This document shows positions 1 through 58,335 of a DNA stretch of 64,000 nt, piece after piece. The notes under the pieces are model-generated. The model made no database searches and had not been told where the DNA came from. It saw nothing but the letters and a program-made list of their open reading frames with translations. Position 1 is the stretch's first letter. Every line of letters begins with the position of its first letter. Location of the stretch: the IMG/VR virus record IMGVR_UViG_3300036944_001324, positions 124,001 to 188,000 of that record. One strand, written 5' to 3'. Both the position numbers and the translations under genes were made by a program.

Positions 1-1
1 C

Positions 2-64
2 AAGGCAACTATCAGCTACGTTGGCAAGTACATTGCTGACATGGTGGAAGTGTTCAACAACTAA
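2..64 (+). CDS. 3' end of an upstream gene (partial)
   Basis: Open frame KATISYVGKYIADMVEVFNN ending in TAA at 62-64, followed by a hairpin element. Confidence 0.6.
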   Translation, partial: KATISYVGKYIADMVEVFNN

Positions 65-80
65 TCCCTTGGTTGTAGAA

Positions 81-127
81 ACGGCATAACAAGGAGAGTC
101 CCTTCATCGGGCTCTCCTTTTATGTTG
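81..127. terminator. CATA/TATG-framed hairpin
   Basis: ACGGCATAAC-AAGGAGAGTCC...GGGCTCTCCTT-TTATGTTG. Confidence 0.7.
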
Positions 128-152
128 CTCAACCTATTCCAAAGAGGAAGAT

Positions 153-881
153 ATGGATTTCAGTCAATTGCACCGGGACGCAGCAGCAGTGAAGAAAACT
201 CTGCTGATGACGCCTGGTGATAACAGCGTGTACACCAAGACGGGATGCAAGGTTTACTTCCCGCAGCGCTTCCTTGATCGCTCTATGGCGTTCGTAGGCA
301 GTGAGAACTTGGTCTGCGGTATTGTGGCTATCGTGTTGGAAACCGGCGAGTACGCAGTCTTGTCGGTGAACGCCATGGTTCCGATGGAGCCCGACACAAT
401 CGAGAAGGTTAACTACCTTGGTGTCGATTATGTGGAGTTTGGTTTTGAGCCCGGTGCTCGTGTCATCAAGACCCTTGATTTGGTCAAGAACGACATCTTG
501 GTTTACCGGATCAACAACGAACTTATCTCCAAAGGAAATGTTCCTTGGTACATGGAGTACGACGACATGGCTGCAGTGTTTGATACTGCGGCCAAACATG
601 CAGGCACCAACATCGCTGAAAACAGTGAGGTGACGGAACTCATCGTTTCATTGATCGCGCGTGACCAAGAAGATCGCACGGTTTACTACCGCTCGACTAT
701 CAACACGCCAGAAGAGATGAAAGCCAAGAAAGTAGCATGGATCGCCATGATGAGCGCTGCTTACTCAGCGACCAATACCCTGAACAAACTAGGCGGCAGC
801 TACTTCACTGAAGGTGCTTTGTCCGCTATGGTCTATCCGACTGAACGTGTGGAGAAGATCGAAGAGTTGATCCGAGCCTGA
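153..881 (+). CDS. Conserved phiKZ-like protein, probably the virion RNAP beta' C-terminal fragment (phiKZ gp176/SPN3US gp244-like)
   Basis: 242 aa, SD GAGGA. C-terminus ATNTLNKLGGSYFTEGALSAM resembles the beta' C-terminal region. Lies near the prohead protease as in related phages (recalled synteny). Confidence 0.5.
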   Translation: MDFSQLHRDAAAVKKTLLMTPGDNSVYTKTGCKVYFPQRFLDRSMAFVGSENLVCGIVAIVLETGEYAVLSVNAMVPMEPDTIEKVNYLGVDYVEFGFEPGARVIKTLDLVKNDILVYRINNELISKGNVPWYMEYDDMAAVFDTAAKHAGTNIAENSEVTELIVSLIARDQEDRTVYYRSTINTPEEMKAKKVAWIAMMSAAYSATNTLNKLGGSYFTEGALSAMVYPTERVEKIEELIRA

Positions 882-884
882 GTC

Positions 885-1154
885 ATGGAAGACGCGGCTT
901 TCGATCAGTTCACGTTCGTCATGTTGATCATGACGCTCAAAGAGATCGCTCACACTGAGATCTTTCGGACCAACCAAGAACGCTCTAAGCGTTTCGCCAC
1001 GAATTACCCGACGCTCATGGCGGGCGGTTACGTGTGTAGTTGGGGGGTTACCCTATGGTTGTTGTTTGACAACGCTCCAGCGGCCATTGCGGGCTTCCTA
1101 GCGGCATTCCTGTGGGAGGTTCTCATGACACCTACAGCTGGCCGTAAAAAGTAG
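885..1154 (+). CDS. Small membrane protein
   Basis: 89 aa with 2-3 hydrophobic segments and a basic C-terminus (GRKK). Confidence 0.55.
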   Translation: MEDAAFDQFTFVMLIMTLKEIAHTEIFRTNQERSKRFATNYPTLMAGGYVCSWGVTLWLLFDNAPAAIAGFLAAFLWEVLMTPTAGRKK

Positions 1155-1165
1155 ACATACTACAA

Positions 1166-1204
1166 GCATAAAAGCCAGCCGTAAAAAGCTGGCTTTTATG
1201 CTGT
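1166..1204. terminator. CATA/TATG-framed hairpin
   Basis: GCATAAAAGCCAGC-loop-GCTGGCTTTTATGC, perfect stem. Confidence 0.8.
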
Positions 1205-1224
1205 TTAGTAGGGTGAAGGTAACA

Positions 1225-1250
1225 TTTTTCAGCGATACATCATCGATGTG
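1225..1250 (+). promoter_or_regulatory. Putative phage early promoter
   Basis: TTTTTCAGCGATACATCATCGATGTG matches the repeated consensus TTTCRNNSAYAYATYATCNNTGKG. Confidence 0.7.
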
Positions 1251-1306
1251 TATTGGTACGTCTAAGCGTACAAGCCCTGGCTAGCAACCAGGGTTTTTAT
1301 GCCGTC
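1251..1306 (+). ncRNA. Candidate ~50-nt small RNA or attenuator
   Basis: Promoter motif directly followed by hairpin GTACG/CGTAC and terminator CCCTGG/CCAGGG-TTTTT-ATGCCGTC; no ORF. Confidence 0.4.
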
Positions 1307-1397
1307 TAAATGCAAACTTCTCACTAAACGGATTTTATAAAAACCGGACACCTAATTGCGTGTGTCCGGTATGTCGTTCAATCATCGAAAGAAAAAC

Positions 1398-1823
1398 ATG
1401 CAATACTTGAATCAACTCACTGGTCGTTCTTTCTCTTTGTCTTTGGTGGTTTGTGAGAAAAGAGGTAAAGGGGTAATTGCCTATCTTGTTCCAACACATC
1501 TCGTAGGTAATCCCGTTATTGGGGTTATGGATAGAACGCGCATGACGCCGAGCGACGGAAAACCCTGGTATCCAGTGTTCGAGGGTGACGACCTTATCTC
1601 GGCGCTCGCTGGACTGGAAACTTCTATTTCTGTCGTACTCTCACGGACACGAAACGGCGAGATAATTTCCGTAGAGAAGTTCGCAGCGATGACGTGGAAC
1701 ACAGCAGTGTCCACTATTCAACATAACCGACCCGTTCTGAGTGTTACAGCTATTCTTAAAATGGAAGACATCTCACAGCTCATTCCGCGAGATAAGGCCG
1801 ACCCGCCTTCCTGCGGTATCTAA
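1398..1823 (+). CDS. Hypothetical protein
   Basis: ORF; ATG at 1398 preferred over the upstream TTG. Confidence 0.6.
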   Translation: MQYLNQLTGRSFSLSLVVCEKRGKGVIAYLVPTHLVGNPVIGVMDRTRMTPSDGKPWYPVFEGDDLISALAGLETSISVVLSRTRNGEIISVEKFAAMTWNTAVSTIQHNRPVLSVTAILKMEDISQLIPRDKADPPSCGI

Positions 1824-1832
1824 GGGGTTATC

Positions 1833-2219
1833 ATGAAAGACTTTTTCACATCTGAAGTTTTGCACCCTACTGGGTTTGCCAAGATGCAGGACAAAGACGC
1901 CGTTCGTCACAAAATCGGATTGATCTTAGCCGGTGCAGATCACGCCTATTTGATCCTCGCTGACCATCCTCTTGGTCTCTACGATAAGGACAAACTTCAC
2001 GAACACCAAGAAAGCTTTCGCAAAGAAGTTTCTGCTATCGTGGTGCAAGCCAGTTACGTACTGGACAACTTAACCCAGTGGGGTGTTTGTCCTGAAGCAG
2101 ATAAGAACATGCTGGACTTCGTGATTGCAAAAGCATGGGGTAATCACCATGCGTTGGTGCGGTTGATGGATGAGGAATGTCATGTAGCAAAGTTATCGAA
2201 AGGTACTTTGAAGCATTAA
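1833..2219 (+). CDS. Hypothetical protein
   Basis: 128 aa ORF with SD AAGGGG. Confidence 0.65.
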   Translation: MKDFFTSEVLHPTGFAKMQDKDAVRHKIGLILAGADHAYLILADHPLGLYDKDKLHEHQESFRKEVSAIVVQASYVLDNLTQWGVCPEADKNMLDFVIAKAWGNHHALVRLMDEECHVAKLSKGTLKH

Positions 2220-2347
2220 AGGAAAGTCACTACAGGACGAAGACAGGAATTATGTGTACGTAATTCCCTGACACCATAAACCCCCTTAGTAGCTACAAGG
2301 CTACTAAGGGATCTTTATCGGGGTCTTTCTTTTCTTATCTTCGCCCT

Positions 2348-3097
2348 ATGAACAACATTCGTTTTACCTGCACCTCGCTGGCTAACACCGGCAAGAAAGG
2401 CATCTTGGTGCCTGATGCCGATGGTTACTACACACAAACCATCGGTGGCTTGTCCATCTTCAATTCGGCTGGTCATTTCTACGAAGCCAATCGTGCAGCG
2501 TTGTCTCTCTTTGAGAACTCGTCTGCGTTCATGCGACGTGTCAAACGCGGCGCCCTTCGTGCTGAAGTCGACCATCCCGAATGGAAGAAAGGCATGACTG
2601 AGGATGAGTACGCTGCACGGATGATGACCATCGACCCCCGCAACGAATGCGCCCACTTCTCCGAGATCTTCCTTGACACGAAGAACTTCAAGAATGCAGA
2701 TGGAACTCCCGTGGTTGCTATCATGGGTAAGTTCAAGCCTTCCGGCGTGCACGGCGAAATGCTGCAAAAGAAAGTGGACAATGGCAAAGAGAACGTTTGC
2801 TTCTCTATCCGAGCTTTCACCCAGGACACCTACCAACGTGGCGTACGTCATCGCACGTTGTGCGAAGTCATCACGTTCGACTACGTGAACGAACCTGGCA
2901 TCCACATCGCTGAGAAATTCAAGAGCCCGACGCTTGAGAGCTACGTGGACAAGACCTGGACCCGTGAAACCATCGAGAAGGCTTGCGATCGTCAAGTCCT
3001 GAACTTCGGTCGTGAGTCCGTCACCCTGAGCAAAGAACAGTTGTTCGAGAGCTTCGGTTGGAAAGAACAATCGATGCCTGGCTTTACCCGCTGGTAA
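2348..3097 (+). CDS. Prohead (head maturation) protease, phiKZ gp175-like
   Basis: Catalytic-His motif AEVDHP, catalytic-Ser motif CFSIR, ITFDYVNEPGI, and a C-terminal PTLES autocleavage-type site. Confidence 0.85.
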   Translation: MNNIRFTCTSLANTGKKGILVPDADGYYTQTIGGLSIFNSAGHFYEANRAALSLFENSSAFMRRVKRGALRAEVDHPEWKKGMTEDEYAARMMTIDPRNECAHFSEIFLDTKNFKNADGTPVVAIMGKFKPSGVHGEMLQKKVDNGKENVCFSIRAFTQDTYQRGVRHRTLCEVITFDYVNEPGIHIAEKFKSPTLESYVDKTWTRETIEKACDRQVLNFGRESVTLSKEQLFESFGWKEQSMPGFTRW

Positions 3098-41087: not shown

Positions 41088-41155
41088 AGTTAGGATTACA
41101 CTCCTCCCTCGAGATGCATTTCGTCAACAAAGTACTTTCAAGAAAGGAACACCCC

Positions 41156-43129
41156 ATGGGCGTTCAATCTGGTAACAACCAAACCAACGTGTCTTCTGCT
41201 GCTCCTGCACAACAAACCCCCGATGCGGGTCTGCACGTCCGTTCCGAACAAAAGCAAGCTGCTGCTGCCGACACCTCCGGCATGTGGAGTTTTGTCAACA
41301 GCGGCCTGCCTGAAATCGTCTCGACCAAAGCCGGCGGCGCCGACGTTCGCACCATCGTGGCCACCATCGCCGCGATCATGGCCAAGGAAGCTCCTCAGCC
41401 TGGCTTCGATGTGGACACCCACGTCGTGGACAACACCGTGGACACCGGCTGGCGCTACAGCACCGTGATCGTCTCGCTCAAGCAGAAGACCACCAACACC
41501 GTCGCGTTCTACCCGCTGGTGCTCGAGTCGACCGAAACCCGCGCCCTGGAAGCCGACGTGCGCGAAGTGGGCAACATCGTCTACCACGTGGACCGTGTGC
41601 CTTCGGACGCTCTGGACGCCGACATGACGGCAGCTATCGCCAAGCTGATGCTCACGACCTTCCCCGGTCATGAACTGCTGGACGTGGGCGGCATGGTGGT
41701 GGCTCGCACCGTCGATGCTGCCGCTGAAGATCAAGTGCGTCCCGTGCTGTACAACGCAGTGCGCGCCTGCTTGACCGCCATCGTGGAAAAGAACCCCGAG
41801 TTCGTCGACATGAACCTGGGCCTGCGGTCTGACGACACGTACCAAAGCGTCAACCTGCAAGTCACGAACCAGCACCACATCGACATCGTCGGCCAGCCCA
41901 TCCGCCAAGACGTGATCGTCACCCTGACGGCTCGCCAAAAGCAGAACGACCAAGGCAATCAGCCCGGTGGCCAAAAGCACCGCTCGATCCACGACATCGG
42001 TGGCACTGAATCCGTGATCGGCGGCATCGGTGGTTTCTTCGACGTGGTGATCACGCCTCCTGCGACCAACTCGGCCTACGCGATGGCCAACCAGAACCCC
42101 CTGGACCGCACGCGTTCGTTCGTCAAGCGCCTGGTGCTGACGCACTTCAACCAACCGCGTCTGTCGACCCTGTCGTCGACGCTGATGATGCTGAACCAAG
42201 CGACTCTGTTCTCCGATCCGTCGGTGAGCGATTCGGTGTTCTATCAGCGCATGAAGCAGCACCGCCTGGACGTCGGCGCCAAGGACAAGGGTGTGGACCC
42301 TACCGATGTGGGCATCCTGAACCTGATCAGCAACGTGATGAACGTGCCTGCCGGTCAAGCCGTGCAACCGTTCGATCTCAAGAGCAACACGCTGACCACC
42401 GATGTGTTCGCCGGCTTCATGAACCAGGTCTTCCACCCTGGCTTCTCGTTGGCGATCGACGTTCCTCGCGCCGGCCCACAAAGCTGGGTGCTGGACGTGT
42501 TCACCGGTGCAGCTGCTGGCCGTCCTGAAGCTCTGAGCGAAATCGTCCGTGCAGCCAACAAGCTGACCAACGGCGCTTTCGGCAATCACTTCTTCAAGGG
42601 CTCGCCTGCCGGTCAAAACATCGTGACGACCGACATGATCTTCTCCGAAGTGAACAACACCGTGCACAACGGCTACTACGTCAAGGGTGACGGCGTCAAG
42701 CGCGACATCCGTGAAGTGGACTACCTGTACGTGCTGAACCGCTTTGGCCAGATGGACAAGACGGCCCTCGACTGGGCCATGACGTTCCTGGTGGACCGCG
42801 TGAATCCCTACCAGCGCATGGCGCGCCGCAAGGAAATCATCGAAGCCTGTGTCGGCGGCCGCGTGACCATCACTGGTTTCAGCGAGCGTCACACCTTCAG
42901 CGATCACTTCGTCGGCTCGCTGTTCGCAGCCTGCCTGGACATGAAGCTCAAGCCCAACTTCCAGTACAACAACCCGCTGGCGGGTGCTACGACTGGTCTG
43001 GTGGCTCCTGGCTTCGTGGGCTCGCGCGGCATGATCAACGGCAACCTGCTGCAAGCTGGCTTCACCGCCGCTGGCAACAACGCGGCCGCTGGTGGCGCTT
43101 TCCACAACCCATCCCTGGGTCGTTGGTAA
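41156..43129 (+). CDS. chmA: Chimallin, phage nucleus shell protein
   Basis: 657 aa from ATG 41156 (SD AAAGGA). GQPIRQD, GYY...RDIREVDYL and ITG...R motifs. Extreme codon bias. Lies directly upstream of the nvRNAP beta' gene. Confidence 0.88.
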   Translation: MGVQSGNNQTNVSSAAPAQQTPDAGLHVRSEQKQAAAADTSGMWSFVNSGLPEIVSTKAGGADVRTIVATIAAIMAKEAPQPGFDVDTHVVDNTVDTGWRYSTVIVSLKQKTTNTVAFYPLVLESTETRALEADVREVGNIVYHVDRVPSDALDADMTAAIAKLMLTTFPGHELLDVGGMVVARTVDAAAEDQVRPVLYNAVRACLTAIVEKNPEFVDMNLGLRSDDTYQSVNLQVTNQHHIDIVGQPIRQDVIVTLTARQKQNDQGNQPGGQKHRSIHDIGGTESVIGGIGGFFDVVITPPATNSAYAMANQNPLDRTRSFVKRLVLTHFNQPRLSTLSSTLMMLNQATLFSDPSVSDSVFYQRMKQHRLDVGAKDKGVDPTDVGILNLISNVMNVPAGQAVQPFDLKSNTLTTDVFAGFMNQVFHPGFSLAIDVPRAGPQSWVLDVFTGAAAGRPEALSEIVRAANKLTNGAFGNHFFKGSPAGQNIVTTDMIFSEVNNTVHNGYYVKGDGVKRDIREVDYLYVLNRFGQMDKTALDWAMTFLVDRVNPYQRMARRKEIIEACVGGRVTITGFSERHTFSDHFVGSLFAACLDMKLKPNFQYNNPLAGATTGLVAPGFVGSRGMINGNLLQAGFTAAGNNAAAGGAFHNPSLGRW

Positions 43130-50047: not shown

Positions 50048-50977
50048 ATGTCTACTGATCAGCAAAACGCCGCTACTGCCGGTGCTGGTGCGCCCGCTGC
50101 CGCTGAAACCCCCGTGAAGAAATTCAAGGAGGTTTACATCAATCGTTTCCAAATGGAAGCGCCCATTCCCGGCTCCCGTGGCGACCAAGCGGCCAACCTT
50201 TCGTGGGGTGCTTTCCGTGGTAATCCGCGGATCATCATCCGTACCAACGATCCTGCTGACGCTGAGATCAACTACGGCAAGATCAAGGCCAACATGGACA
50301 TCGGCACGTTCGAGTACCTGGCCGATCGCATCATCTTCGCTACGACAGCCGAAGCCGGTTTCAAAGAGAAGATCATCAACAAGTCCACCTACAAGGGCGG
50401 TCAGCGTTTCGACTCCCCCGAAACCATCAACTCGACGTTGTTCGGCAAGGACACCGACGGCCGTGTCTGGATCTCCGTGGTGGAAGACAGTCGCCCAGCG
50501 CCTCGTTTCTTTTTTGGTCCCTCCAAGTTCCATTCCGTGGTCCGTCAAGACGGCACGCCTTTGTCCGACGCAGAAGCATCGTGCCACTTCGCACGTGCCA
50601 CCATGCAGGCCTTGAAAGGCATCATGCACAGCCTGGCAGCCCGTGCAGCGCTGGGTGATGAAGAAGGTGGTGACGACGCCAAGCCATCCGCAGAAGGCGG
50701 TGGCGGCGGTTACAAGGGTGGTGGTCAGGGCGGCGGCTGGAAAGGCGGCGGCCAAGGTGGTGGTTGGAAGGGTAACGGCGGCGGTGGCGGTTGGCAGGGC
50801 CGTGGCCAAGGTGGTGGCGGCGGTGGCTGGAAAGGCGGTGGCCAGGGCGGTGGCTGGCAGGGTCGCAGTAATGGCGGCGGTGGTGGCGGTGGTTGGCAAG
50901 GTCGCCCCGGCGGCGGTGGTTACCAAAAGCCTGAAGCAGCTGCAGCGGCCGTGGGTCATGACGACATCACTTTCTAA
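50048..50977 (+). CDS. chmC: Probable ChmC-like nucleic-acid-binding protein with Gly/Trp-rich tail
   Basis: Directly upstream of the gp68-like gene; folded N-domain (GNPRI, FFFGPS) plus a low-complexity tail. Call is mainly synteny and architecture. Confidence 0.6.
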   Translation: MSTDQQNAATAGAGAPAAAETPVKKFKEVYINRFQMEAPIPGSRGDQAANLSWGAFRGNPRIIIRTNDPADAEINYGKIKANMDIGTFEYLADRIIFATTAEAGFKEKIINKSTYKGGQRFDSPETINSTLFGKDTDGRVWISVVEDSRPAPRFFFGPSKFHSVVRQDGTPLSDAEASCHFARATMQALKGIMHSLAARAALGDEEGGDDAKPSAEGGGGGYKGGGQGGGWKGGGQGGGWKGNGGGGGWQGRGQGGGGGGWKGGGQGGGWQGRSNGGGGGGGWQGRPGGGGYQKPEAAAAAVGHDDITF

Positions 50978-56205: not shown

Positions 56206-58335
56206 ATGTTGTATAGTCCACATACCCCCATTACCACTGCGCCACCAGAAGGGCAGTTCAAGCGCAAGCTGCTCAGTAGCGCAGGGTTGTCGCCATGGCC
56301 GCACTTCGTGAGTCCTGGTCGTCAACAAATGTTCACGAACAGCCACTTGGCACAAAAGATCGTGACCATGGGGATGAACGAACGGTACTGTCAAACGGGC
56401 ATGGAGTACGAGTTCGGTCGCGCTACTTTTTCTGTCAAGATGCCGTGCGACGGCAAGATCTTGCAAGTCATTCGACGCTATCCTGAAGGGGTGGCCGCTG
56501 ACGCTATCAAAGAAAATCCCGAGACTATCGTGATTTTCGAAGACAACGCTACCAAAGAAGTCGGGATGCTGACTCTTCCGCGTTACTTCTCTTACCATAG
56601 CTATTTCGGCTTCCCCTATAGGGAGGGTAAAGGAGCATCACAATTGCAGGTTGGAGCTGTTATCCCTAAGGATACCATCTTCCTAGACTCACCTGGCAAG
56701 AATCCATCCACGGGTAACTATGCCTACGGCGTGGAGCTCAACGTAGCCTTCTTGAGCCATCCTGCTATCTCTGAAGACGGCATCGTCATCAGTCGCGATA
56801 AGCTGCACTTGTTCCGCTTCAAGCGTTACGAAACTCGGGCAGTGGAGTGGGGTGAAAAGACGTTTGCTTTGAACGTCTTCGGCCAAAAAGACGGCGAGTA
56901 CAAGATCTGCCCGGACATCGGCGAATATGTTCGTCCTGACGGTTTGCTGATGGCTTTCCGCACTTACGACGAAAAACTGGCCCCGGTGAACATGTGCGTT
57001 AATGCTCTCAAGCGCATTGACTACGCGCACGACGAGCGCGTTTATGCCAATGGTCCAGGTGGTAAGGTGATTGACATTCGCGTCACTACCAACTTTGACA
57101 TCACGCAAGGTCTGTCTGACATGGATCGTCAGATGGAAAAGTACATCAACCAACGCCGTGCGTATTTCGAACAGATCATTCGAATGTACGATCAACTGCG
57201 CCGTAACAAGGCATTGCAACTGAGTCGTCCTTTGCACGCTTTGATTGTCAAGGCTTACACCGAACTGGCCAGCGGCAAGCAGCGCCTGGGCAAGCTGTAT
57301 CGCAAGACTCCACTGGATCATTTCCGTGTCGAGTTTGTGATCGAATATGAAATCACGCCGTCTATCGGTTTTAAGTACACTGACACCTTCGGTGGAAAAG
57401 GGGTTATCTGCCATATTGAAGAGCCTGAGAATATGCCTGTGGACGCTCAAGGCGTTCGTGCAGACATGATCATGGGTGCAGAAGCCCGAACCAACCGAAT
57501 GAACATCGGTGGGTTGTACGAACACTACTTCAATGCTGCGAGTCGGCAAGTTTGCTTTAACGTACGTGACTGGCTGGGGCTGACCAAGGAGACACGTGGC
57601 GCTAAGGAAGCTATCGAGATGATTCACCAAACAGACCCAGCACGGTTCGACAAGGTCTGGAATCATGTCATCGGCTACTACCGGATCGTCGCTCCTATGC
57701 AGGCCTATTTCTACGACAGTGGAAAGATCGGCATGGATGGGGTCTACGAGAACTTAGCGACCATCGTTAACGACATGGTCTATCTGTTCTTACCGCCGGA
57801 TTACGCAGTTGATTATGTCAACGCTATCTTGCAGATTGAAGAGCATGTGAAACCCATCTACGGACCGGTGCGCTATACCGGGTACTCCGGCAGAAGTTGC
57901 ATGACAAAGCGGCCTGTGCGTATCGGGAGCATGTACATCATGCTGCTTGAAAAGACAGCGGACGATTGGTCGTCTGTTGCATCTGCACGTGTTCAGCACT
58001 TCGGTTTCTTGGCCCAGATCGGCAAGACTGACAAATACTCCGAACCTCTTCGTCAGCAGCCTATCAAGGCCGTTGGTGAAACTGAAGGCCGGATTCTCAT
58101 GGCGTATTGTGGCGCTGCAACCATGGCTGAAGTCATGGATCGCAACAACAATCCCGCTGTGCACAAGGAAATGGTTTACCGCATTCTGAATGCGGCTAAA
58201 CCCACTGCGATTAACAACATCGTTGACCGCAATAAGTTCCAACTTGGCAAGAGCAAGCCCATCCAGATGCTGCACCATTTGCTCAACTGTGCAGGCATTG
58301 GGTTGGCGTATACGAAAGAGAACACGACGGACTAA
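56206..58335 (+). CDS. Non-virion RNAP beta C-terminal subunit (phiKZ gp71-73-like), uninterrupted
   Basis: R..M...HL.Q, EDGIVIS, G.K.....GGKGVI, RMNIG, YIMLLEK and GETE motifs. Confidence 0.92.
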   Translation: MLYSPHTPITTAPPEGQFKRKLLSSAGLSPWPHFVSPGRQQMFTNSHLAQKIVTMGMNERYCQTGMEYEFGRATFSVKMPCDGKILQVIRRYPEGVAADAIKENPETIVIFEDNATKEVGMLTLPRYFSYHSYFGFPYREGKGASQLQVGAVIPKDTIFLDSPGKNPSTGNYAYGVELNVAFLSHPAISEDGIVISRDKLHLFRFKRYETRAVEWGEKTFALNVFGQKDGEYKICPDIGEYVRPDGLLMAFRTYDEKLAPVNMCVNALKRIDYAHDERVYANGPGGKVIDIRVTTNFDITQGLSDMDRQMEKYINQRRAYFEQIIRMYDQLRRNKALQLSRPLHALIVKAYTELASGKQRLGKLYRKTPLDHFRVEFVIEYEITPSIGFKYTDTFGGKGVICHIEEPENMPVDAQGVRADMIMGAEARTNRMNIGGLYEHYFNAASRQVCFNVRDWLGLTKETRGAKEAIEMIHQTDPARFDKVWNHVIGYYRIVAPMQAYFYDSGKIGMDGVYENLATIVNDMVYLFLPPDYAVDYVNAILQIEEHVKPIYGPVRYTGYSGRSCMTKRPVRIGSMYIMLLEKTADDWSSVASARVQHFGFLAQIGKTDKYSEPLRQQPIKAVGETEGRILMAYCGAATMAEVMDRNNNPAVHKEMVYRILNAAKPTAINNIVDRNKFQLGKSKPIQMLHHLLNCAGIGLAYTKENTTD

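What the first reader, a model, noticed from the sequence alone, without database searches (positions are those of the whole stretch)
1225..1306. Promoter-hairpin-terminator mini-unit with no ORF: candidate ~50-nt early small RNA
Seen: a consensus promoter immediately followed by hairpin GTACG-TCTAAG-CGTAC, then CCCTGG-CTAGCAA-CCAGGG-TTTTT and the TATGCCGTC arm. A terminator also lies just upstream (1166-1204), so the unit is insulated on both sides. Inference: a stand-alone tiny RNA made at the start of infection (decoy or anti-defence RNA), or an attenuator for the 1398 gene.
Basis: partly seen in the sequence, partly recalled or inferred. Interest (0 to 1): 0.6.

Follow-up and report, generated by a model that had tools for sequence, protein, structure and literature searches.

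The report
Orphaned early promoter facing a terminator
In this phiKZ-like jumbo phage, an intact early promoter runs straight into a terminator because the gene that once lay between them was deleted; any ~50-nt RNA it makes is most likely a by-product of gene loss rather than a purpose-built small RNA.

Summary
The sequence observation is correct. Window 1218-1252 is one of the three best of 25 copies of a genome-wide promoter motif. All copies are on the + strand, and other copies precede the nuclear-shell (chimallin) gene and a non-virion RNA polymerase gene, so I infer it is the early, virion-RNAP promoter. Window 1272-1306 is a member of the conserved phiKZ-type terminator family (hairpin plus TTATKYYGT), as are T1 (1166-1204) and a third terminator, T3 (1344-1377).

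Relatives explain the unit. At the same locus, one phage has the same promoter driving a 363-aa ORF. Two others have it driving a 39-aa membrane mini-ORF. Both ORFs end in ...PVYWYV-stop, with the stop codon inside hairpin 1, followed by T2. The window keeps only VYWYV-stop (1248-1265) with no start codon. The mini-unit is therefore a deletion scar.

It probably still gives a roughly 47-55-nt early transcript, plus some read-through towards ORF 1398. That matches the short RNAs made by premature termination in 5' UTRs and already mapped in phiKZ and 201phi2-1. The stand-alone unit is not conserved, and nothing supports a decoy or anti-defence role. No RNA data could be obtained. Verdict: a new member of a known kind, of modest interest.

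The parts
1166..1204 (+). T1: phiKZ-type terminator closing the upstream structural operon (genes 153-881 and 885-1154). Extended stem GCATAAAAGCCAGC / GCTGGCTTTTATGC, tail TTATGCTGT.
   Evidence: hairpin dG -13.2. Conserved at this locus in L002, L003/L004, L005, L006, L008 and L009.
1218..1252 (+). Early (virion-RNAP type) promoter. Conserved core TTTCAGCGATACATCATC at 1227-1244; AT-rich -10-like element at 1234-1240. The transcription start is inferred at about 1246-1252.
   Evidence: PWM score 37.8 bits, among the three highest of 25 copies, all on the + strand; shuffled maximum 15.7. Sister copies lie before chimallin (window 41064) and nvRNAP beta (window 56096). The same promoter sits at this locus in L002, L008, L009 and L006. 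The start-site position is inferred from PMC7598289 (conserved AT-rich element centred near -10).
1248..1265 (+). Vestigial last five codons plus stop (VYWYV-stop) of the lost early ORF. The deletion junction lies at about 1247-1253, within an imperfect TGT(G/T)TA microhomology.
   Evidence: frame translation; the L002 363-aa protein ends APVYWYV-stop and the L009 39-aa protein ends SPVYWYV-stop. Alignments A1-A3.
1256..1271 (+). Hairpin 1 (weak, about -5 kcal/mol). The ancestral stop codon TAA (1263-1265) lies in its loop. It is part of an 18-nt block, 1254-1271, that is invariant in four phages.
   Evidence: all 6 pairs invariant in 4 sequences; unique in the genome.
1272..1306 (+). T2: phiKZ-type terminator. 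Stem 1272/1275-1280 pairs with 1288-1293/1296, loop CTAGCAA, T5, tail TTATGCCGTC. It was originally the terminator of the lost ORF.
   Evidence: dG -12.7, against a family median of -19.0; one compensatory pair and one one-sided change in L002. The motif equals the published phiKZ terminator motif (PMC10914365).
1344..1377 (+). T3: third same-strand family terminator (CCGGACAC / GTGTCCGG, tail TATGTCGT). On the - strand it reads as a hairpin plus T5. Absent in L008/L009 and degenerate in L002.
   Evidence: (dG -12.8).
1398..1823 (+). ORF 1398 (141 aa): a real but fast-evolving accessory gene with atypical codon usage, and the first intact cistron downstream of the promoter.
   Evidence: codon score about 0, below the 1st percentile of the phage's genes; 36% identity to the L002 141-aa protein (E 4e-30) and 31% to the L003 140-aa protein (E 7e-20). 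No family hits.
1833..2219 (+). ORF 1833 (128 aa): second accessory cistron.
   Evidence: 46% identity to the L003 126-aa protein. Its homologue is interrupted by a frameshift or stops in L008/L009.
2283..2310 (+). Terminator-like 12-bp hairpin that closes the accessory unit, before the head protease gene (2348-3097).

Best explanation
The mini-unit is the remnant of an early-gene cassette in a phiKZ-like (Chimalliviridae) jumbo phage.

Ancestral layout: T1, then the early promoter, then an ORF for a membrane-anchored protein ending ...PVYWYV-stop, then hairpin 1 (stop codon in its loop), then terminator T2, then a 141-aa accessory gene.

In this phage a deletion between short similar sequences, TGTGTA at the promoter's start region and TGTTTA in the ORF's last codons, removed the whole ORF. 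The intact promoter now sits about 25 nt from the ORF's own 3' hairpin and terminator.

Inferred working: the virion RNA polymerase still initiates at about 1246-1252. Most transcripts stop at T2, giving a two-hairpin RNA of roughly 47-55 nt. A fraction reads through T2 and then T3 to give low early expression of ORF 1398 and ORF 1833. The short RNA is a by-product of premature termination, of the kind mapped in phiKZ and 201phi2-1, and is not a conserved RNA gene.

Shown here: the sequence elements, their family membership, and the comparative series 363 aa, 39 aa, 0. Inferred: the early timing, the start site, termination at T2 and the read-through.
For: 1. Phage type. The S80 head protease, chimallin and split RNAP beta genes identify a phiKZ-like jumbo phage of 271,654 bp.
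2. Promoter class. There are 25 copies, all on the + strand and far above shuffles. Copies sit directly upstream of chimallin and of the nvRNAP beta homologue. PHIKZ054 carries an early promoter in phiKZ (PMC8244752). In these phages the one bioinformatically detectable conserved motif is the early promoter, with an AT-rich core near -10 (PMC7598289).
3. Terminator class. 65 sites have a hairpin plus TATKYYGT. This matches the published phiKZ motif ...YTTATKYYGT, which was mapped at 61 termination sites (PMC10914365), and 201phi2-1 motif A.
4. Deletion series. L002 (84% aa relative): promoter, 363-aa ORF, identical hairpin 1 spanning the stop, then T2. L008/L009 (81%): promoter, 39-aa ORF, hairpin 1, T2 with a stem-loop identical or nearly identical to the window's. 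The window retains VYWYV-stop in frame. L005 (70%) has a homologous 368-aa ORF at the locus. No homologue of the ORF exists elsewhere in this genome.
5. The arrangement is an outlier. Only 2 of 25 early promoters have a family terminator within 50 nt downstream; for the other 23 the next one is at least 1.3 kb away.
6. Read-through is plausible. T2 and T3 are among the weakest hairpins of the family. In L008/L009 the 141-aa gene lies only 38 nt after T2, with no other recognisable promoter. A second promoter-terminator-gene arrangement elsewhere in the genome is conserved in three relatives with covarying stems.
7. Precedent. In phiKZ, over 90% of transcripts from P112 stop at a 5'UTR terminator, giving a northern-validated RNA of about 71 nt. 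There are 17 such candidates in phiKZ and 11 in 201phi2-1.
Against: - No transcript data.
- The direction of the event (deletion rather than insertion) rests on parsimony across only 5-6 metagenomic relatives.
- The 18-nt block containing hairpin 1 is invariant in four phages whose neighbouring structural protein is only 81-86% identical. It is as conserved as the promoter core. This hints at a function of its own that the 'scar' reading does not explain.
- The promoter is fully intact and T2 in the window has a better U-tract and tail than in L008/L009. That could reflect selection on the short unit.
- If T2 plus T3 terminate efficiently, ORF 1398 would need another promoter, and I could not identify one.
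Confidence: 0.72

Rival explanations
1. The unit is a dedicated stand-alone early small RNA (decoy, anti-defence or regulatory). The promoter-hairpin-terminator arrangement is itself the selected gene, possibly exapted after the ORF was lost.
For: The promoter is intact and strong, at 37.8 bits. The unit is insulated by T1 upstream and by T2 plus T3 downstream. The predicted RNA is well folded, z = -2.7. The 18-nt hairpin-1 block is invariant in four phages. phiKZ-like phages do make abundant short RNAs of this architecture (PMC10914365, PMC11512511).
Against: The stand-alone unit is seen only in this genome. The nearest relatives have an ORF between promoter and hairpin 1 (L002, L008, L009) or lack promoter, hairpin 1 and T2 altogether (L003/L004). 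Hairpin 1's conservation is confounded by its coding for WYV-stop. There is no Rfam match. No other copy of hairpin 1 exists in the genome. No target or partner is known.
Confidence: 0.08
2. The unit is a functional leader or attenuator of an early operon. Its main role is to drive ORF 1398 and ORF 1833, with T2 and T3 setting a low read-through level. The short RNA is irrelevant.
For: ORF 1398 and ORF 1833 are intact and conserved as proteins. T1 blocks read-in from upstream, and no other recognisable promoter lies before 1398. In L008/L009 the 141-aa gene follows T2 by 38 nt. L003 has a weak early-like motif before the homologous gene pair. A conserved promoter-terminator-gene arrangement exists after the GlcNAc-transferase gene. 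In phiKZ, 81% of 5'UTR terminators show both a short and a read-through form.
Against: Two terminators in series lie before the ATG. No alternative (antiterminator) pairing or leader peptide is evident in the fold of 1248-1410. This reading largely overlaps with the best explanation and differs only in what is under selection.
Confidence: 0.15
3. The order of events is reversed. The ORF-less unit is ancestral, and the 39-aa and 363-aa ORFs were inserted between promoter and hairpin 1 in the relatives.
For: The locus is a hot spot of gene gain and loss. The distant relative L001 has the structural gene and the protease adjacent, with no accessory region.
Against: Two ORFs of very different length end in the same in-frame PVYWYV-stop, which the window also retains. 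L005 (70% relative) has a homologous 368-aa ORF with VYWF near its end but lacks this promoter and hairpin 1. Independent insertions would have to recruit the same pre-existing non-coding 18 nt as a C-terminus.
Confidence: 0.04
4. The unit is a silent fossil. The promoter no longer fires, for instance because the deletion changed the initially transcribed sequence, so no RNA is made.
For: The deletion junction lies at the predicted start region.
Against: The sequence up to and including TGTGTA matches other high-scoring copies, for example window 28984 and genome 66223 and 99850. Sequences downstream of the start are not conserved among copies.
Confidence: 0.05

Closest known systems
Short RNAs made by premature termination in 5' UTRs of phiKZ and 201phi2-1 (ONT-cappable-seq; PMC10914365, PMC11512511)
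   Same: A phage-polymerase promoter is followed within tens of nucleotides by a conserved phiKZ-type terminator, so a short structured RNA is predicted together with a read-through form. Precedents are the phiKZ P112/T102 RNA of about 71 nt and the 141-nt intergenic RNA, both confirmed by northern blot.
   Different: Here there is no RNA evidence. The predicted RNA is shorter, at about 50 nt. The unit is demonstrably a deletion derivative of a protein-coding cassette and is not conserved as such in relatives. The published candidates are reported as conserved within genera.
phiKZ conserved intrinsic terminator motif (stem-loop plus YTTATKYYGT; 61 sites in phiKZ, motif A in 201phi2-1)
   Same: T1, T2 and T3 all carry a GC-rich hairpin followed by (T)TATKYYGT. 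The genome has 65 such sites, many of them bidirectional.
   Different: The stems here are not the C-rich/G-rich consensus of phiKZ. T1, T2 and T3 have unusually weak hairpins for the family, about -13 against a median of -19 kcal/mol.
[quoted passage not shown]
   Same: A long phage-specific conserved motif with an AT-rich -10-like core. It is strand-biased and lies upstream of chimallin and nvRNAP genes.
   Different: The sequence of the motif is specific to this clade (core TTTCAGCGATAYATCATC). It is shared with metagenomic relatives L001-L009 but not with phiKZ. The start site has not been mapped.
Bacterial sRNAs that arise from decayed protein-coding genes (from my own knowledge; not checked here)
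   Same: A transcribed remnant of a former ORF, flanked by a surviving promoter and terminator.
   Different: No evidence that this remnant has acquired any function.

Membership tests
Early (vRNAP) promoter class of this phage clade | Match to the genome-wide conserved motif with an AT-rich -10-like core | tested here: met
   37.8 bits, among the top three of 25 copies; shuffled-genome maximum 15.7. The degenerate core pattern gave 7 hits in the window against 0.45 expected.
Early (vRNAP) promoter class of this phage clade | The class lies upstream of canonical early genes (chimallin, nvRNAP subunits) | tested here: met
   There are copies at window 41064 before chimallin (phrog_4795) and at window 56096 before the homologue of KTN4 non-virion RNAP subunits.
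Early (vRNAP) promoter class of this phage clade | Primary 5' end mapped about 10 nt downstream of the AT-rich core, early and independent of protein synthesis | not testable with these tools
phiKZ-type conserved terminator | GC-rich stem-loop immediately followed by (Y)TTATKYYGT | tested here: met
   T2 has a stem of 6-9 bp, then T5, then TTATGCCGT at 1297-1305. The motif is taken from PMC10914365.
phiKZ-type conserved terminator | Structure kept in relatives despite sequence change | tested here: inconclusive
   There is one compensatory pair (U-A to C-G), one one-sided change and one broken pair in L002. With only 4 sequences, 129 of 500 shuffles did as well.
phiKZ-type conserved terminator | RNA 3' ends map to the site | not testable with these tools
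   No RNA data.
5'UTR / premature-termination short ncRNA of phiKZ-like phages | Terminator immediately downstream of a promoter (unit under 250 nt), with no ORF preceded by a ribosome-binding site | tested here: met
   46 nt from the end of the promoter block to the terminator tail. No ORF with a start codon lies inside 1248-1306.
5'UTR / premature-termination short ncRNA of phiKZ-like phages | Abundant discrete short transcript sharing its 5' end with a longer read-through form | not testable with these tools
   No RNA data.
5'UTR / premature-termination short ncRNA of phiKZ-like phages | The unit is conserved upstream of the equivalent gene in related phages | tested here: not met
   L002 and L008/L009 carry an ORF between promoter and hairpin 1, and L003/L004 lack the unit. 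By contrast the second such unit, at genome 239673, is conserved.
Trans-acting sRNA / decoy / anti-defence RNA | Independent conservation of the RNA, or a recognisable family or target | tested here: not met
   No Rfam hit near any gathering score. No exact matches to the 21-nt hairpin-1 pattern in viral or metagenome contigs. The unit is unique in the genome. Target search was not possible because the host is unknown.
Regulated transcription attenuator (leader peptide or antiterminator type) | Mutually exclusive terminator and antiterminator pairings, or a leader ORF | tested here: not met
   The MFE and centroid folds of 1248-1410 keep hairpin 1, T2 and T3 together with no competing helix. 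There is no leader ORF.

The most novel reading that the evidence does not exclude
The orphan RNA of about 50 nt is not mere debris. It would be an early small RNA newly born from a decayed gene. The 18-nt hairpin-1 block, which is invariant across phages with a 363-aa ORF, a 39-aa ORF or no ORF, would be a functional RNA or protein-binding element, and this phage would express it on its own from a strong virion-RNAP promoter at the very start of infection.
Probability: 0.08. Interest if true: 0.55.

Novelty: new member of a known kind. Interest (0 to 1): 0.3.

Why it matters
The finding shows how a 'promoter-terminator mini-gene' can arise in a jumbo phage simply by losing the ORF of an early cassette. 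It is therefore a caution against reading every such unit as a designed small RNA.

The work also gives a usable map for an uncharacterised phiKZ-like clade. That map comprises 25 early promoters with a clade-specific motif and 65 terminators of the phiKZ TTATKYYGT type. It also shows a hypervariable accessory locus, between a virion protein gene and the head protease gene, where genes are visibly shrinking and disappearing.

If the short RNA exists, it adds one more example to the premature-termination RNAs known from phiKZ and 201phi2-1. It would be a natural test of whether such RNAs need to be selected at all.

Tried and rejected
- DNA relatives: blastn and megablast against 'phages' found nothing. 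tblastn with ORF 1398 found nothing. An exact 21-nt hairpin-1 pattern found nothing in viral contigs or metagenome contigs.
- Genome tools: the genome search 'relatives' and 'handles' are not available for this record.
- Protein route: the search for related loci gave one distant locus (L001) and none for ORF 1398. The word search with ORF 1398 found only the window's own protein.
- Rfam: there was only a weak Thr_leader-like hit on T1 (E 0.056, 27 bits against a gathering score of 55) and noise in the unit itself.
- Sigma-70 scan: no host-type promoter in 1-3000.
- General 5' hairpin after early promoters: several copies show one, closing GAG...CTC. However, the mean folding energy of the 25 downstream 50-mers (-11.0) is no different from random genomic 50-mers (-10.5), so I do not claim enrichment.
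- De novo search for middle or late promoter motifs: intergenic 7-mer enrichment recovered only terminator and T-rich words, so I could not assign another promoter to ORF 1398.
- Family scans: Pfam and PHROGs scans of the lost 363-aa/368-aa protein and the accessory ORFs gave nothing significant.
- A mini-ORF at 1245-1283 (12 aa) was considered and rejected. Its ATG lies in the promoter's start region, and it is not conserved in L009.

Full report
**Context.** The window is bases 124001-188000 of a single 271,654-bp contig with 51% GC. The contig encodes a Peptidase_S80 head protease (window 2348-3097), a nuclear-shell (chimallin) protein (41114-43129) and split multisubunit RNA polymerase beta genes. 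The nearest named phages reach only 38-47% protein identity; they are Burkholderia FLC9, Ralstonia RP12 and phiKZ-like Pseudomonas phages. It is therefore an uncharacterised phiKZ-like (Chimalliviridae) jumbo phage. No DNA-level relative exists in the phage collection.

- The stretch 1218-1252 is a copy of a long motif, roughly yCTAAnAAAtyTCAGCGAYAYATcATCgnTGnGAG.
- A degenerate core pattern hits 7 times in the window against 0.45 expected.
- An iterated position matrix finds 25 copies in the genome at 19.6-38.1 bits, all on the + strand. A shuffled genome reaches 15.7 bits at most. The copy in the finding scores 37.8.
- Hairpin 1 (1256-1271) and hairpin 2 (1272-1296, followed by T5 and TTATGCCGTC to 1306) are as described. 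The 55-nt RNA from 1248-1302 folds into exactly these two stems, at -19.9 kcal/mol and z = -2.7.
- The upstream terminator T1 at 1166-1204 is real.

**Promoter class.** Copies of the motif lie directly upstream of chimallin (window 41064). Another lies upstream of the gene at 56206-58335, whose best phiKZ-group match is annotated as non-virion RNAP subunits in phage KTN4. In phiKZ the chimallin gene PHIKZ054 has an early promoter (PMC8244752). The nvRNAP genes must be transcribed by the injected virion polymerase. In RNAP-encoding jumbo phages, the one conserved motif that can be found bioinformatically is the early promoter, with an AT-rich core centred near -10 (PMC7598289). I therefore assign the motif to the early, virion-RNAP class and place the start at about 1246-1252. 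Both steps are inferences; no start site was mapped.

**Terminator class.**
- TTATKYYGT occurs 35 times on the + strand and 27 on the - strand, against about 5.5 per strand in shuffles.
- 65 sites have a hairpin immediately followed by TATKYYGT, and nearly all are intergenic. Many are bidirectional, with GCATAA... on the 5' side.
- This is the conserved phiKZ terminator motif published as ...YTTATKYYGT for 61 mapped termination sites (PMC10914365). It also resembles motif A of 201phi2-1 (PMC11512511).
- T1, T2 and T3 are all members. All three have weak hairpins for the family: -13.2, -12.7 and -12.8 kcal/mol, against a median of -19.0.

**The arrangement is unusual in this genome.** For 23 of the 25 early promoters the next family terminator lies at least 1.3 kb downstream. 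Only two promoters have one within 50 nt. These are this one and one at genome 239673. The common arrangement is the reverse, with a terminator at most 52 nt upstream of the promoter; 8 of 25 show it.

**Relatives explain the unit.** A protein search with the flanking virion protein (153-881) found metagenomic relatives at 69-86% identity, and I fetched their contigs.

| Relative | Identity of the flanking protein | State at this locus |
|---|---|---|
| L002 | 84% | T1 and the same promoter drive a 363-aa ORF with an N-terminal membrane helix, ending APVYWYV-stop. The stop lies inside a sequence identical to hairpin 1. A terminator follows whose stem differs from T2 by one compensatory pair. 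|
| L008, L009 | 81% | The same promoter drives a 39-aa membrane mini-ORF ending SPVYWYV-stop. Then come hairpin 1 and a T2 with a stem-loop identical or nearly identical to the window's. The 141-aa gene starts 38 nt later. |
| L005 | 70% | A homologous 368-aa ORF sits at the locus (28% identity over the C-terminal half, E 8e-11). It has no promoter motif and no hairpin 1. |
| L006 | 69% | T1 and the start of the promoter are present at the contig end. |
| L003, L004 | 86% | Only T1 is kept. A different AT-rich 300 nt with a weak early-like motif (13.4 bits) precedes the accessory genes. |
| L001 | 39% | The virion gene and the protease are adjacent, with no accessory region. |

- The window reads GTG TAT TGG TAC GTC TAA, that is VYWYV-stop, at 1248-1265, with no start codon.
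- Nothing elsewhere in the genome resembles the lost protein.
- The left side of the junction follows the promoter up to TGTGTA. The right side follows the ORF end from TATTGGTAC. The two parental sequences share an imperfect TGT(G/T)TA.
- The simplest history is therefore 363 aa, then 39 aa, then nothing, and the mini-unit is a deletion scar.

**Downstream genes.** ORF 1398 has a codon-usage score of about 0, below the 1st percentile of the phage's genes, and has no family hits. It is nonetheless a real gene, 36% and 31% identical to same-sized ORFs at the locus in L002 and L003. ORF 1833 is 46% identical to a L003 ORF, and its homologue is broken in L008/L009. These accessory genes evolve much faster than their neighbours and sit in a gain-and-loss hot spot.

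**How it most likely works.** The promoter is intact, so the virion polymerase should still start here. T2 is a bona fide family terminator, so a two-hairpin RNA of about 47-55 nt is the expected main product. Some read-through is likely, for five reasons:
- T2 and T3 are weak for their family.
- ORF 1398 and ORF 1833 have no other recognisable promoter, and T1 blocks read-in from upstream.
- In L008/L009 the 141-aa gene follows T2 almost directly.
- The other promoter-terminator-gene arrangement, after a GlcNAc-transferase gene at genome 239673-239753, is conserved in three relatives at 65-80% identity, with covarying stems.
- In phiKZ, 81% of 5'UTR terminators give both a dominant short RNA and a read-through form. 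Northern blots confirmed examples of about 71 nt and 141 nt (PMC10914365). 201phi2-1 has 11 such short RNAs (PMC11512511).

**What is not supported.** Nothing points to a decoy or anti-defence role.
- There is no Rfam match.
- The stand-alone unit is not conserved.
- No target can be searched, because the host is unknown.
- No leader peptide or competing antiterminator helix is visible, so a regulated attenuator is not indicated either.

**One unexplained point.** The 18 nt TGGTACGTCTAAGCGTAC (1254-1271) are invariant in the window, L002, L008 and L009. That is as conserved as the promoter core, although the flanks diverge. Part of it codes for WYV-stop, but the six bases after the stop are invariant too. 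This keeps a small probability alive that hairpin 1 has a function of its own.

**Limits.** The comparative series rests on a handful of metagenomic contigs. Timing, start site, termination and read-through are all inferred.

**Verdict.** The unit is a new instance of a known kind, a promoter-proximal terminator unit of a phiKZ-like phage, and its origin by loss of the intervening early gene is well supported.

Noticed in passing
L010:1673-1755 (= genome 239673-239753, outside the window): This is the only other early promoter followed within 50 nt by a family terminator. It overlaps the stop of a GlcNAc-transferase (PF11397) gene and precedes a ~175-aa ORF. Unlike the unit in the finding, this promoter-terminator-gene arrangement is conserved in three relatives (L011 80%, L012 67%, L014 65%) with covarying or remodelled stems. 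It is a better candidate for a maintained 5'UTR attenuator or short RNA.
   Followed up: partly
window 1298-1301 and 1370-1373; genome-wide terminator tails: The conserved terminator tail TTATGCCGT contains TATG, which is the core of the phiKZ late promoter (T-3 ATG+1; PMC7598289). Terminator tails might double as late re-initiation sites; for example, G1373 lies 25 nt before the ATG at 1398. This is pure inference. I found no statement of it in the papers read.
   Followed up: no
window 2244-2270: A conserved stem-loop (GGAATT ... AATTCC, with loop ATGTGTACGT) lies upstream of the head protease gene. It is also present in L008/L009, and in L005 with changes on both arms (GAGAAT ... ATTCTC). 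It could be a regulatory or promoter element for the protease gene, whose ATG (2348) has no Shine-Dalgarno sequence and sits in TATG.
   Followed up: no
window 1254-1271: An 18-nt block including hairpin 1 is invariant across four phages that carry a 363-aa ORF, a 39-aa ORF or no ORF upstream. It is as conserved as the promoter core, and coding for WYV-stop does not fully explain this.
   Followed up: partly
window 885-2347 versus L001-L009: The stretch between the virion protein gene and the head protease gene is a hot spot of gene gain and loss. L001 has no accessory genes there. L003 has the 1398 and 1833 homologues in the reverse order. L002 and L005 have an extra 363/368-aa gene. In L008/L009 the 1833 homologue is pseudogenised.
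   Followed up: partly
window 1398-1823: ORF 1398 has a codon-usage score of about 0, below the 1st percentile of the phage's genes. It is only 31-36% identical to its positional homologues, while the neighbouring structural protein is 84-86% identical. It is a very fast-evolving accessory gene of unknown function. The stored gene call (150 aa) starts at the ATG inside T3's tail (1371); the relatives favour 1398.
   Followed up: partly
whole genome (G000): All 25 early-promoter copies are on the + strand and are spread from 49 kb to 266 kb. About 217 of roughly 257 modelled genes are on the + strand.
   Followed up: no
window 50693-50938: Tandem degenerate repeats rich in GGT/GGC lie inside ORF 50048-50977. 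They encode a Gly/Trp/Gln-rich low-complexity region.
   Followed up: no
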